NCBI GenBank assembly: GCA_964106915.2
Contig: OZ066924.1
Length of the DNA: 64,000 bases
From: Podarcis gaigeae
Lineage: Eukaryota
Strand: one strand, 5' to 3'
In this document: positions 29,793 to 64,000 of the stretch, piece by piece
Numbering within the stretch: the first letter of the stretch is position 1
Layout: each line of letters starts with the position of its first letter
Made by a program: the position numbers and the translations under genes
Notes under the pieces: model-generated
What the model was told of the DNA's origin: nothing
Database searches by the model: none
The model's input: only the letters and a program-made list of their open reading frames with translations

Positions 29793-30558
29793 TACTTGCA
29801 CATGATGCTAAAGTTTCACATTTTGGCAATTTTTAATGTAATACGTTCAGTTACAGTTCTGGCAGACAGGCAGATAGACAGATATATAAAAAGGAAGCAT
29901 CTCAAAAGCTTCCATTCATTATTTATTGTCTATTGATTTTGTAATAGGCATAGGTTTCTTTTGCGGGGATTTTTTTTTTTTTTTTTTAATCTTAAAACTA
30001 GTTCTGCATTCCCAATAGGCCTATGTATATGTCACAGAGGCCTGCTGTTTGGGGGTGGCAGTGGCAAAGCATCCCACTTGGCATGCCCCTGTGCCAGATA
30101 TAGAGACAATGTAGTGCCAGGCTGTTTTGCCAGACACTCCTCTCTTCAACCATGCATAGCCTGTGGTAGCAAACAGGAAGATGAAATCAGAAGGTACCAG
30201 CTTATAAGCATGAGCAGACCACTTTGCCCAGTATTTCATAGCAGCAAGATGGTCATATGGAATTGTCGCCACCGTTCGCTGATGGTGGAAATTATTCTTG
30301 AACAGTTCGTTGCATGATGGGGACATTTTCAAAAATGTAAGGCTGCTGCACCCTCTGCACATAAAATCATATTTGCAGAAGTGTGTGTTGTCTGTTTATA
30401 TAAAACATTTTCTTTGCTATCAATATTTCCATTAACTATGGGTTGAATTTGAAACTGTTTAAAATAGCTGAAACATCAGTAGAAAGACACCTGGATACCT
30501 GCAGTTTTAATGTTCCTGACAAGGTGGGCCACATTATTTTGAGAATGTCATTATACAA

Positions 30559-36385: not shown

Positions 36386-37199
36386 GTTTTTTGTTTTGTT
36401 TTTTAAATGTATTTTTATTAAAGATTTTCTTGATTTACAAAGGTATGTGCAATGTCTTTCAATTTTTTCCCCCACGTAACAATTTTTAAAATATTTTTTT
36501 ACAAATCGGTTTCATTTGTTGAGACATTAGGAAGAATAGGGGGAAAGAGGTGGAGGGGGAAAAATATGAGTGGGGGTGGGGTCAGGTGGTGATGTTTCTA
36601 TTTTGCTTAATATATGTGGGGTTTTGTGTCAGCGTTGCTTGTGTGGGTTCTCTGCTGTTCACTTGCGTTCCTTTGGTGGTGAGAGAGGTTGGGGTTGGCC
36701 TAGGGTGTGGCTGTTCATTTGTGGTTGGCTGTGGTGATCTTTGTTTTCATGTGTGAGTGGGGTGGGTGGGTGTTTTGGATCAGGTTAGCCATATTGATTT
36801 GTATGCTGTTGGTGGATTTTTGTCATTGTCTTGTTGGGCTGTGTATGTGATAAAGGGGAGCCATACCGGGGTGAAGGAGTCTTTTTCTATTTGTCCCCGT
36901 GTCAGTTTCAGTTTATTGGCTAATTTTTCTAGTAAGGCTGTTTCCCATACTATTGGTACCATTGGTCCATGTTTATTCCTGACAGGTCTCTCCAGTGTCT
37001 GGTTATGACGTTTCTGGCTGCTGAGAGTAGGTGGGTTATGAGTTCTTTGTGGCGTAAGTGGGCATTGTTGTCTTGGAAGATGTTTAGTAGGGCCATTTCT
37101 GGGGTGATTTCTAATACTTGCTTGGTTATTTTACATATTTCTCATATGACTGTTGTCCAGAATAGTTGGATTTTGGGACACTCCCACAACATGAGGAGG
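36386..37199 (-). mobile_element. 5'-truncated L1-clade LINE, second family, decayed
   Basis: Minus strand reads MLWECPKIQLFWTTVI*EICKITKQ...LLSAARNVITRHWRD...WYQ/IVWETALLEKL with one stop and one frameshift. AATAAA and an A-rich tail lie at the left end. Flanking 15-mer TGGA(T/A)CGGGTGCTTG at 36371-36385 and 37200-37214. Confidence 0.87.
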
Positions 37200-37374
37200 T
37201 GGAACGGGTGCTTGTTCAGCCAATACTTAGTGAAAGCAAAGTTGCCACCCCCACCACCCCCATCAGCTGCACAGGGAGTTCAATCTCCTTGGCTTGTCTG
37301 CAAAATCATCAAATTTCAGAAGCAAAATTTGAGGCTTTTTCATTTGCAGAAAAACAAAAGGAGACATGATAGAG

Positions 37375-46120: not shown

Positions 46121-47617
46121 AACAGGTTGTGTGCCTACAGAGAGAGGGCCATGCACACAAGAGCAATATTTTAATTTTCAAATGTAGATATTGCATCATA
46201 GTGTAGATTAAAAAAAACCCCAAAACTAAAAAGGATAGCTTATGGGTGAGGGACGTGCCAAAGGACTCTATAAAGTTTAGTTACCAACAATGAGCAATTG
46301 TATACTGAATGTGCAGCATAGTTCCTGCCATGCTTCTGTCAAACTGCTTGACAGGCGAAGGCCTGGCATGTGACAGCCAAGATAACTCTGCACACACCGT
46401 CTGCACCGTTGCAAGAGGACCTTGATGAATGAAAGTGCAAGCAGATCTTCTCCCCTAGGACAAGGGGATCATCCGCTTCCCATTCTTCACAGACACCCAG
46501 GAAAAATGCACATCTGTCAGTGTAATGCCACGTTCTATTGAAGACTTGGGCTTTCGGTAATATTGGCTCTTGCATCACTTAGACCGATTGAAGTGTGGCC
46601 AGGTATTGGCTTGGCGTGTCAGTCGCATGGTGCGGTAGATAAATAAAACACCTGGGAGACAGCATTAAGGTTCAGCACAAGCACACAGAGGGAGAAGAGC
46701 AAGGGATGTATTGATTGCGAAAGAATGTCAACCAGAGACAAAGAAAGTAGCCTTTAGGGGGCAGGAGAAGACTGCAAATGCACAGAGGTCTTATAAAACA
46801 GACTAACCAGTGTAATGTTTGTGTTTCTGGCTGAGTTTAGCTAAAAGCTATCTAAGTACAGAACATTATTTTGCACTCCACACAGCAGAATTAGTATAGC
46901 CATAACAAATCTGAAAACATGAAATATGTGAAATTAAACTGACATGCAGAGTAGTGGTATGAGCTACATAAACTCTGTGTTTATATATGGCACACACAAA
47001 CGCTCTAAAATATATATACTTTCTCTCCTTTGAAGATGAGTACTTTGTGAGGGGAAGACATCTCATGGACGGTATACACAAAATGTTGTAATTTTTGAAC
47101 TGCTTTAAGTGGGTTTTTTTTTTTTTAAAATGCAAGATTCTAAAGTAAGGTATTTCTAACCCTTTCCCCTCCAATTTTTAGAAACCTAGACTTTTCAGAA
47201 GCAGAATTATCAGCCTAAATGGTTGGATAACCATAAATATAAGCAGAAACACCATGAAATTAAGCAGCACAAAGCAGTTAAGCTAACGATTTCTGCAGTA
47301 CATTGTAAAAATTAATTTAAAATCCAGATTTTGTGAAAAATGCCTGGTAGGCATGCAATCCACATCACTGCTTGTTCATACAGCTTTTACAAAAAATCTG
47401 CAATTCAGCAAATTTGAGAAAGCAGCCAAAGTTATGGGCTTACTGAAATAATTTAACTGACAAGATGAATGAGTATAAATATGGCATGATGCACATCAAT
47501 ATTTATGAAAACCTCTAGCTTTCAAAAATCACATCAAGAACACCCTCAAATTTTAATACTCTGCAGTTTTTTACAGATTCAAATTTCTCTAAGCTTATTT
47601 AACACAAACACACTCAC

Positions 47618-61250: not shown

Positions 61251-61613
61251 CTAGGGAATGAAAGACTAAGAATTACAAGACTAAGCACTGATCAGATACA
61301 CATAAACATAAGTTAGGGCCGTTTAAAGAAACTCCTAAGTTTGATGGTTAATCGATTAAACTGTATTTGCATATGAATTGAGGCAATTCTAAAGCACAAA
61401 GAAAGCCTTTATTTTTAGAGAATGCACAAAAGTGCCAAACTAGGTATAGTTTTAGAAGTCACATTTCCTCCAGTGTGGCAGAGAAAGAGAAAACAGTTAT
61501 CCATAGTTTTTATACGTATAGATGTATTAAAAACGATTGCTTTTAAACAGTCTGTTGCTTGATTAATTGACACTCTTCTTTGGTCAATCAATTCTTTAAA
61601 AATTGATAAATCC

Positions 61614-62533
61614 CCACTGGGCTGAACTTCACTGCATGTAATGCTCTGAAGGAAAATGTAATGAAAATGATATATAGATGGTACATGACCCCTGTTAAAC
61701 TTGCTAAAATATACCACTTGTCCGAAAATAAATGTTGGAAATGTAAGGAAAATGAAGGAACATTCTTTCACCTCTGGTGGACTTGCCCGAAAGTGAAGGC
61801 CTTCTGGGAAATGATATATAACGAGCTGAAAAAAGTATTTAAGTATACTTTCACTAAGAAACCAGAGGCCTTCCTCCTGGGTATAGTCGGCCAGAAGGTG
61901 TCAAAGAAGGACCGAACATTTTTTATGTATGCTACAACGGCAGCAAGGATACTTATCGCTAAGAACTGGAAAACTCAAGATTTACCCACACTGGAAGAAT
62001 GGCAGATGCAGCTGATGGACTATATGCAATTGGCGGAAATGACCGGCAGAATCCGAGACTTGGGAGAAGAAAAGATTGAAGAAGACTGGAGGAAATTCAA
62101 GATTTATTTACAAAAATATTGTAATTTGGTGGAATGTTAAGAAGGGTGCTTGATTACAAAAAATTGGCCATCACTAATTTGGATTTGAATTGGAAGATAA
62201 GTGAGATTTTAGAAAACAAAAATTGCTGAAGAATTGTTATTTATTATTTATCATTTAAAAGAGCGACTATAAATTACATGATAATTTGCTTGGAAAAATG
62301 TATTTACAATGTAAGTGTGAACGGGAAACGTGAGGAAGTCCAAAAAGGTTTGAAAATTTGTTAAGACAAAAGGAATGTTGTTTATTATTTTTGTATTTTT
62401 TATAAAAAACCCTAATAAATATCTTTATAAAAAAAAAAAAAAACAAACTTTGAAAAGCTGGTGTCATTGGATCAAGTTCATCAGCTTTGTTGAATTAATT
62501 AAACTAATAGTTTTAACTGGGAAAAAAAAAAAA
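61614..62533 (+). mobile_element. 5'-truncated L1-clade LINE (ORF2 C-terminus, 3' UTR, poly(A)) with 3'-transduced segment
   Basis: Open frame 61616-62140 with zinc knuckle CWKC..FFHLWWTCP and AARILIAKNWK. AATAAA at 62414, A15 at 62429-62443, second A-tract from 62522. TSD AAAAATTGATAAATCC at 61598-61613 and 62534-62549. Confidence 0.93.
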
Positions 62534-64000
62534 AAAAATTGATAAATCCAAGTTGAAACCCTAACACAAAGTCTTTACTTTAAAAAAATAAATGGAAAAG
62601 AACAGCCAATTTTGTAACAAAAAATAAAATGCGAAGAAGAGACTGCCTGCTTGCATCCCCCAACCCCACTAAGCCACTTTGACAGTTGATGGGGCTGTGC
62701 CCCTGTCAATCACCCAACATGCCTGGTGACAATTTTTTCCCTTGTAGTGGGACAAGCTGAGTGATGGTAACTCCAAGCTTGCTTTTAACATGAATCAGCT
62801 GCACAGCCAATCCAATAACTTGAAGTTATTGCTTATTACCATTGATAGGCACTGATAAGACCACTAGAGCTCGACATGCTCTGTTTTGGGCAGGGGTCAA
62901 CTGCACTAGGTTCCTCCAAAGCATAATCAAGGAGAACACTTTTAAGATTCCTGCATCTCTACCTGCCCCACACCTGACATCACATATGATGGGCATGGTT
63001 TGGGGAAAATGGCCTGATGGGCCAAACTGGGGCCCCTGCCAGGCCTATTAGGCCTGTGAGCTGGAGGTTTTCCACCCCTGGCCTACTGGATTAACCCACT
63101 GGGAACAGCAACAATCCTTTACCAATGTCATACCCCAGGTCTATCCCAGGTATTCCTCTAAATACTTTCCATCCTCGCATCCACCATATTTGCAGTTTAA
63201 CACAGGATAGTAAGAAATAAAAATGAAAGTACTTTTTTTTAGTTATTTGTTTAATTATGTCGTATTGCAGAACATCTATTATTAAACTTAAATTTTTTAA
63301 TGGGTGATGTACAGGTGGGTTTCAGGATTGCAATCTCCAAGGAATAAGTTGTTGGGAGGATCAGTGCATGACTCACTGGGGGCTTTCATAAAACAAAATT
63401 ATAAATCTGGCATATACCTCACAGCATTACTCTAGCTCACAGAGCTATCCCAAATCACAACTAGCTGCGTTCCAGATTTATAAATTGCATAACTCCCATC
63501 GTAAGCAAGAAGAGCAGCAAGTGCTGAATTACCATAAATTATACATTAAGCACTGGGATATCCCTTTGTGAATTTCAAAAGCTATAAAAGATAGATATGC
63601 TGTGCAGATATTTAAGCCTACCTAATTGCCCCATGCTGAGGACTCTGAAATGATCCAAAGGGTTGCTATGTAAAACATTTGTATGTGGCAATTTCTGTGG
63701 GCGTAGGATCTTTTAGTGTGAGCTCAGCTAATTCTCTGGATTGCAGACACTATCCAGTACACACAGATACATTTAATTAAGGATGGAATCACATTCTACA
63801 TTGGCAGCAAAGCTTGTCATTTGAACACAAGGGCTTGCAATTCTAAAAAGAACAGATTCCCCAGATGGGAACCTGGAGTGCACCCAGTCAATATTTGTAA
63901 GCAAGACATGGGGAAAAGGGGCGGAGAGTCCATAGCCATAACCTCCTTCAGGTTTGAATACTCATACATATGTGGGAGTATCAGTAGATGCAATAGAAAG

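What the first reader, a model, noticed from the sequence alone, without database searches (positions are those of the whole stretch)
61598..62549. L1 3' transduction in a lizard: double poly(A) with 78 nt of captured DNA inside a perfect 16-bp TSD
Seen, in order: TSD AAAAATTGATAAATCC (61598-61613) preceded by TTT, giving a TT/AAAA-type site; L1 ORF2 end and 3' UTR; AATAAA (62414); A15 (62429-62443); a unique 78-nt segment (62444-62521) with its own ATTAAA (62498-62503) 18 nt upstream of a second A-tract; the identical TSD (62534-62549). Established: this layout is the signature of L1 read-through past its own poly(A) signal, copying flanking DNA from the donor locus. It is best known in mammals. 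Inference: the 78-nt tag is a barcode for the specific source element, and squamate L1s can move genomic DNA.
Basis: partly seen in the sequence, partly recalled or inferred. Interest (0 to 1): 0.78.

Follow-up and report, generated by a model that had tools for sequence, protein, structure and literature searches.

The report
Young lizard L1 insertion, probable 3' transduction
A very recent, still polymorphic L1 retrotransposon copy in a wall-lizard genome carries 78 extra bases and a second poly(A) tail inside one target-site duplication; this is the expected footprint of L1 read-through (3' transduction), but the donor locus could not be searched, so the case is likely, ordinary in kind and not proven.

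Summary
A perfect 16-bp direct repeat (61598-61613 and 62534-62549) encloses, in order:
- a 5'-truncated L1 (ORF2 C-terminal domain, 3' UTR, AATAAA);
- A15;
- a 78-nt segment with its own ATTAAA 18 nt before a second A-run.

Contigs from three public runs cross the site with exactly 936 bases missing and one repeat copy left. The runs are another individual with the same species label and two close relatives. So the whole composite, 78-mer included, is absent from the ancestral allele, and the insertion is not fixed in the species. It also makes two successive insertions at the same spot very unlikely.

The decisive test could not be run. That test is whether the 78-mer lies directly downstream of a progenitor L1 elsewhere, or is instead a repeat or part of the family consensus.

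Best reading: L1 3' transduction, about 0.65. Rivals: a subfamily-wide extended 3' end, a template-switch chimera, a nested insertion.

The kind is well known in mammals and expected for any poly(A)-type L1. The scan's first readers flagged two more candidates in this genome.

The parts
61598..61613 (+). 5' copy of the 16-bp target-site duplication AAAAATTGATAAATCC, preceded by CTTT (bottom strand TTTTT/AAAG)
   Evidence: The empty alleles keep one copy.
61614..62140 (+). 5'-truncated L1: the last 174 codons of ORF2 (C-terminal Cys/His domain), open to the stop at 62138-62140
   Evidence: open frame; weak zf-RVT match; lizard (Podarcis lilfordi) relatives at 51-78% identity; human L1 ORF2p 1099-1224, E 1.2e-11; other genomic copies continue upstream of 61614 (loose ends ...GGAAAGGTTGTGGA), so this copy is truncated.
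62141..62428 (+). L1 3' UTR (26% G+C) ending with AATAAA at 62414-62419
   Evidence: many contigs at 88% likeness or more, and one 98% alike (record 14), in the best-holding run. The UTR therefore belongs to a multi-copy, recently active family.
62429..62443 (+). internal A15, at the place where this L1's own poly(A) tail is expected (9 nt after the AATAAA)
62444..62521 (+). 78-nt extra segment (32% G+C) with ATTAAA at 62498-62503, 18 nt before the terminal A-run. It has no other copy in the window.
   Evidence: Absent from the empty alleles. No Rfam match.
62522..62533 (+). terminal poly(A): 12 A, plus up to 5 more that are shared with the TSD
62534..62549 (+). 3' copy of the 16-bp target-site duplication

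Best explanation
One recent L1 retrotransposition event inserted a read-through transcript. A source L1 of a currently active wall-lizard family was transcribed past its own AATAAA and through its genomic A-tail (now the internal A15). Transcription ran 78 nt into the DNA downstream of the source, where ATTAAA directed cleavage and polyadenylation. L1 endonuclease nicked the bottom strand at TTTTT/AAAG in this AT-rich, single-copy site. The new poly(A) primed reverse transcription, which stopped about 830 nt into the L1 (5' truncation at 61614). Repair produced the 16-bp duplication.

Shown: the anatomy, the L1 identity, the truncation, the EN-type site, that the whole composite is missing from the ancestral allele, and that the insertion is not fixed in the species.

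Inferred: that the 78-mer is the donor's flank.
For: - The order TSD, L1 ORF2 tail, UTR, AATAAA, A15, 78-mer with ATTAAA, A-run, TSD is exact.
- The only two poly(A) hexamers in the UTR plus extra segment each sit at the canonical distance before an A-run.
- The ORF2 tail is homologous to human L1 ORF2p and to lizard L1 fragments.
- One search shows bridging contigs whose own coordinates are contiguous across 61612 to 62549: X1 record 1 (509|510), X2 record 23 (1311|1312) and X17 record 16 (98|99). The 936 bases (insert plus one TSD copy) are therefore absent in another sample with the same species label (flanks about 0.5% different) and in two relatives (about 1-3% different).
- Because the whole composite is that young, two independent insertions into the same 15-nt A-run are very unlikely.
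- The 78-mer has no second copy in the 64-kb window and no Rfam match.
- From established knowledge: in humans, read-through of the weak L1 signal accompanies roughly a tenth to a fifth of young insertions (Pickeral et al. 2000, cited in PMC5381506). That is far more often than template-switch chimeras occur.
Against: - The defining test was not possible: nobody has seen the 78-mer next to a progenitor L1.
- Read laying masked 62415-62548, so there is no read evidence at all on the 78-mer. This covers its copy number, and whether other family copies run through A15 into it.
- The same anatomy is produced by a template switch from another polyadenylated RNA onto the L1 RNA tail.
- The same anatomy is also produced by a subfamily whose master already carries the extension.
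Confidence: 0.65

Rival explanations
1. Subfamily-wide extended 3' end. The master of this young L1 subfamily already carries A-run plus 78-mer (an older transduction that became part of the element, or simply its normal UTR). Many copies would then share it, and it would not mark one donor locus.
For: The family is multi-copy with near-identical members (830 contigs at 99% or more in X15; record 14 is 98% alike over the UTR). Nothing seen here shows where other copies end, because 62415-62548 was masked.
Against: A pure A15 inside an element that has to be transcribed and copied repeatedly is unstable. AATAAA sits exactly where a real 3' end is expected. The window holds no other copy to compare.
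Confidence: 0.15
2. Template-switch chimera. Reverse transcription began on the poly(A) tail of an unrelated cellular or retroposon RNA, copied its last 78 nt, then jumped to the poly(A) tail of an L1 RNA and copied about 830 nt of it. It is one integration event with one TSD.
For: It gives the same layout, the same single TSD and the same empty allele. The 78-mer ends like a normal mRNA 3' end, with ATTAAA 18 nt before the tail.
Against: From general knowledge of mammalian L1 chimeras (U6-L1 and similar), such events are one to two orders rarer than 3' transduction. The 5' partner is usually a small nuclear RNA joined without a complete poly(A) tail. Nothing here points to a gene origin for the 78-mer.
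Confidence: 0.1
3. Two successive insertions. An L1 inserted first; later a second retroposon, truncated to 78 nt plus tail, landed in its A-tail, with an all-A TSD that cannot be seen.
For: A-tails are favoured targets of L1 endonuclease (general knowledge). The structure would look the same.
Against: The entire composite is missing from another sample with the same species label and from two close relatives. No intermediate allele was seen. Both events would therefore have to hit the same 15 nt within the lifetime of a polymorphism. A rough estimate puts this at least 40 times less likely than read-through.
Confidence: 0.04

Closest known systems
Mammalian L1 3' transduction (Moran et al. 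1999; Goodier et al. 2000; Pickeral et al. 2000, the last cited in PMC5381506)
   Same: L1 3' end with its own signal and an internal A-run. A short non-L1 segment ends at a downstream poly(A) signal. A second poly(A) follows. One TSD of 16 bp lies at a TTTT/AA-type site. The copy is 5'-truncated. The empty allele lacks everything.
   Different: The host is a squamate, and the L1 belongs to a lizard lineage (51-78% identical to Podarcis lilfordi fragments in the ORF2 tail, and only distantly like human ORF2p). The donor locus is not identified, so membership is not complete.
L1-mediated chimeric retrocopies by template switching (U6-L1 and related; see PMC4476161 for U6 pseudogenes)
   Same: Two RNA-derived parts in the same orientation inside one TSD, with a terminal poly(A).
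   Different: Here the 5' part is an L1 3' end with a full A-run, and the 3' part is an unknown 78-nt RNA end. Classical chimeras have a small nuclear RNA as the 5' part.
Polymorphic, recently active L1 families of lizards (Anolis carolinensis; reviewed in PMC5381506)
   Same: Young, low-divergence L1 copies with poly(A) tails and TSDs. Insertions are not fixed in the species.
   Different: This is a lacertid, not an anole. This copy is strongly 5'-truncated and carries an extra 3' segment.

Membership tests
L1-clade LINE insertion | ORF2 C-terminal Cys/His domain homologous to L1 ORF2p | tested here: met
   human L1 ORF2p 1099-1224, E 1.2e-11; lizard relatives; weak zf-RVT match, below Pfam's cut-off.
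L1-clade LINE insertion | poly(A) signal and A-tail at the 3' end, a TSD of about 7-20 bp, and a TTTT/AA-type nick site | tested here: met
   AATAAA plus A15, 16-bp TSD, bottom strand TTTTT/AAAG.
L1-clade LINE insertion | a real insertion: an orthologous empty site with one TSD copy | tested here: met
   contigs of X1, X2 and X17 pass from 61612 to 62549 with no letters between.
L1 3' transduction | non-L1 segment between the element's own A-run and a second poly(A), ending 10-30 nt after a poly(A) signal, all inside one TSD | tested here: met
L1 3' transduction | the extra segment is absent from the pre-insertion site | tested here: met
   empty alleles.
L1 3' transduction | the extra segment is not part of the family consensus and is not another repeat | tested here: inconclusive
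   No second copy in the 64-kb window and no Rfam match. However, read laying masked 62415-62548, and no tool searches the genome.
L1 3' transduction | the extra segment maps to a locus directly downstream of a progenitor L1 of the same family | not testable with these tools
Template-switch chimeric retrocopy | the 3' part derives from the 3' end of an independent transcript with no L1 beside it at its home locus | not testable with these tools
   Same limits as above.

The most novel reading that the evidence does not exclude
Wall-lizard L1s are transducing flanking DNA now. The 78-nt tag would mark one currently 'hot' source element whose offspring could be traced through populations and sister species, as with human transduction families. 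Together with the two other candidates noted in this genome, this would show that L1-driven shuffling of genomic DNA is a regular process outside mammals.
Probability: 0.55. Interest if true: 0.4.

Novelty: new member of a known kind. Interest (0 to 1): 0.3.

Why it matters
If the donor is found, this is a clean, dated example of L1 3' transduction in a squamate, with empty and filled alleles both in hand. It would show that the weak-terminator behaviour of L1, and its ability to carry host DNA along, is not a mammalian peculiarity. It would also give a tag for following one active source element in wall-lizard populations. Independently of that, the insertion is a ready presence/absence marker: it is missing from a sample with the same species label and from two close relatives. 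That absence is evidence that this L1 family has been active very recently. No new mechanism is implied.

Tried and rejected
- BLASTN of the L1 body, the UTR and the 78-mer against the window found only self-hits.
- Rfam at E up to 1 on 61300-62900 found nothing.
- Pfam gave only a sub-threshold zf-RVT match.
- Read laying was meant to show whether other copies run through A15 into the 78-mer, and where 78-mer contigs diverge. The tool masked 62415-62548 as a repeat, so it says nothing on this.
- The search of earlier findings returned nothing near the place and nothing for the sequence of the 78-mer or of the UTR.
- Paper searches for L1 3' transduction in lizards, squamates, Anolis or Podarcis found only mammalian references and 'signal transduction' hits.
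- The other long A/T runs in the window (29970-29987, 47114-47126) were read to see whether an element ends like the 78-mer. They do not.
- Not run, on purpose: a word search of the protein database with the small ORFs that overlap the 78-mer. That database holds only about ten fragments of this abundant L1 domain, so a source-locus ORF is very unlikely to be in it.
- Not run, on purpose: scans of the microbial, viral and metagenome DNA collections, which do not hold lizard genomes.
- Not run, on purpose: the large HMMER search, because the protein is not in doubt.

Full report
**Observation**

- AAAAATTGATAAATCC occurs at 61598-61613 and again at 62534-62549. The two copies are 936 bases apart and 100% identical (family D5).
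- In 500 dinucleotide-preserving shuffles of 61300-62800, the longest non-homopolymer direct repeat never reached 16 nt (maximum 15).
- The 5' copy is preceded by CTTT. The bottom strand therefore reads TTTTT/AAAG at the nick, the L1 endonuclease consensus type.

Between the repeats lie, in order:
- an open frame of 174 codons ending at the stop at 62138-62140;
- a 288-nt AT-rich 3' UTR with AATAAA at 62414;
- A15 (62429-62443);
- a 78-nt segment (62444-62521) with ATTAAA at 62498, 18 nt before the next A-run;
- A17 (62522-62538), whose last five A belong to the repeat.

These two hexamers are the only poly(A) signals in 62141-62549.

**Identity of the element**

- The frame carries CWKC...HLWWTC and aligns to residues 1099-1224 of human L1 ORF2p (8sxt and others) at E 1.2e-11.
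- Pfam gives only a sub-threshold zf-RVT match.
- The word search found ten relatives at 51-78% identity. Several are 'hypothetical' proteins of Podarcis lilfordi; the others come from ENA and Logan contigs.
- Earlier follow-up notes of this scan call the genome a wall lizard.
- The window holds no second copy of the L1 body, the UTR or the 78-mer. It holds only a much older, unrelated L1-like fragment near 36953-37204 on the minus strand.

**What the public runs show**

The look-up of sequencing runs gave coded runs.
- Organism A holds most of the sampled words: X15 0.78, X16 0.71, and X1 0.65 from another study.
- Organisms B, C, D, G and H hold about a third, close to the share of the two flanks in the query.

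I laid X15, X1, X2 (organism B) and X17 (organism G) on 61300-62799 at 88% likeness. Four results matter.

1. The flanks are single-copy. Mean word depth is 67-85 in X15, about 7 in X1, about 10 in X2 and about 69 in X17.

2. 61614-62414 attracts thousands of contigs, which makes it a multi-copy family.
   - 830 contigs in X15 are 99% or more alike.
   - One contig is 98% alike over 62195-62304 of the UTR (record 14).
   - The family is therefore young and abundant in A. The ORF2 part is also abundant in B and G, but the 3' UTR draws far fewer contigs in G.

3. At 61614 the other copies continue upstream (loose ends ...GGAAAGGTTGTGGA in all four runs). This copy is therefore 5'-truncated there.

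4. Three contigs bridge the site with nothing in between.
   - X1 record 1: 61300-61612 lies at its positions 197-509 and 62549-62650 at 510-611.
   - X2 record 23: positions 1007-1311 and 1312-1560.
   - X17 record 16: positions 99-411 and 2-98, on the other strand.
   - The flanks differ from the window by about 0.5% in X1 and by about 1-3% in X2 and X17.

The whole 920-nt composite plus one repeat copy is therefore a derived insertion. It is absent from two close relatives and from another sample carrying the same species label. It is either polymorphic or private to the assembled haplotype.

In X15, the probable source sample, the left contig stops 14 letters beyond 61613. The right contig starts exactly at the first base of the 3' repeat copy. 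That is the pattern a k=31 graph gives when an empty and a filled allele are both present. This is my inference from record lengths only, because the contig letters were not shown.

**What could not be seen**

- Read laying skipped 62415-62548 as a repeat, so depth there is zero even in X15. There is no read evidence on the 78-mer's copy number, on whether other family copies carry it, or on where contigs that hold it diverge.
- No tool searches a eukaryotic genome by DNA.

- one is excluded: the 78-mer is not at the empty site;
- one is made very unlikely: a separate retroposon inserted later into the A-tail;
- one is untested: the 78-mer is part of the family consensus.

**Mechanism**

The most likely reading is classical 3' transduction. 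A source L1 is transcribed through its own AATAAA and its genomic A-tail into 78 nt of downstream DNA, and the transcript is cleaved after ATTAAA. The new tail anneals to the T-run exposed by the nick at TTTTT/AAAG. Reverse transcription stops about 830 nt into the L1, and second-strand repair gives the 16-bp duplication.

Shown here:
- the anatomy;
- the L1 identity;
- the truncation;
- the target site;
- the single-event character, supported by the empty alleles and the lack of any intermediate allele.

Inferred: the origin of the 78-mer.

My odds for the four readings:
- Transduction from a particular donor: 0.65.
- A subfamily whose master already carries the extension: 0.15. This would still be a transduction historically, but the 78-mer would not be a barcode of one locus.
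- A template-switch chimera with another polyadenylated RNA: 0.10.
- Two successive insertions: 0.04. Both would have to hit the same 15 nt within the lifetime of a polymorphism.

**Comparison with what is known**

Read-through of the weak L1 signal and transduction of 3' flanks is textbook for mammals (Pickeral et al. 2000, as cited in PMC5381506). That review of vertebrate L1 mentions transduction only for mammals. My searches found no paper reporting it in squamates. The library lacks most subscription journals, so this is no proof of absence.

Lizard L1s are known to be diverse, young and polymorphic (PMC5381506). They use poly(A) tails and TSDs, so transduction is expected of them. First readers of this scan flagged two more candidates in the same genome (s1-692096 and s1-707684; unchecked). 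If these hold, the process is recurrent here.

**Verdict**

This is a tidy, very young, non-fixed L1 insertion with the complete structural signature of a 3' transduction. It is a new member of a known kind, and its defining feature (the donor locus) is still to be checked. A single genome-wide BLASTN of the 78-mer would settle it. Interest 0.3.

Noticed in passing
window 61598-62549, runs X1 and X15: The insertion is not fixed. A contig from another sample with the same species label (X1) carries the empty allele. The contigs of the best-holding run (X15) break 14 letters past 61613 and exactly at 62534, as expected if that individual is heterozygous. The site is usable as a presence/absence marker.
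   Followed up: partly
window 36953-37204, minus strand: An old, diverged L1-like ORF2 tail fragment, 24-27% identical to the lizard L1 fragments P0001-P0005 by tblastn. It is unrelated to the young family at 61614.
   Followed up: no
protein P0009: A Podarcis lilfordi 'hypothetical protein' of 245 aa is a gene model whose last 67 residues are 75% identical to this L1 ORF2 tail, following about 180 unrelated residues. It is probably an annotation that runs into an L1 fragment.
   Followed up: no
window 29970-29987 and 47114-47126, minus strand: Two further A-runs (A18 and A13 when read on the minus strand). The first follows ...CTAGTTTTAAGATT. They may be tails of other retroposed copies. Neither resembles the 78-mer or this L1 UTR.
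   Followed up: partly
window 62141-62428 against runs X2 and X17 (table 2): The ORF2 part of the family is abundant in all four runs. The 3' UTR draws far fewer contigs in organism G (for example, depth 129.6 at 62200-62249 against about 31,000 in X15). This UTR lineage appears to have expanded mainly in organism A and its nearest relatives.
   Followed up: no
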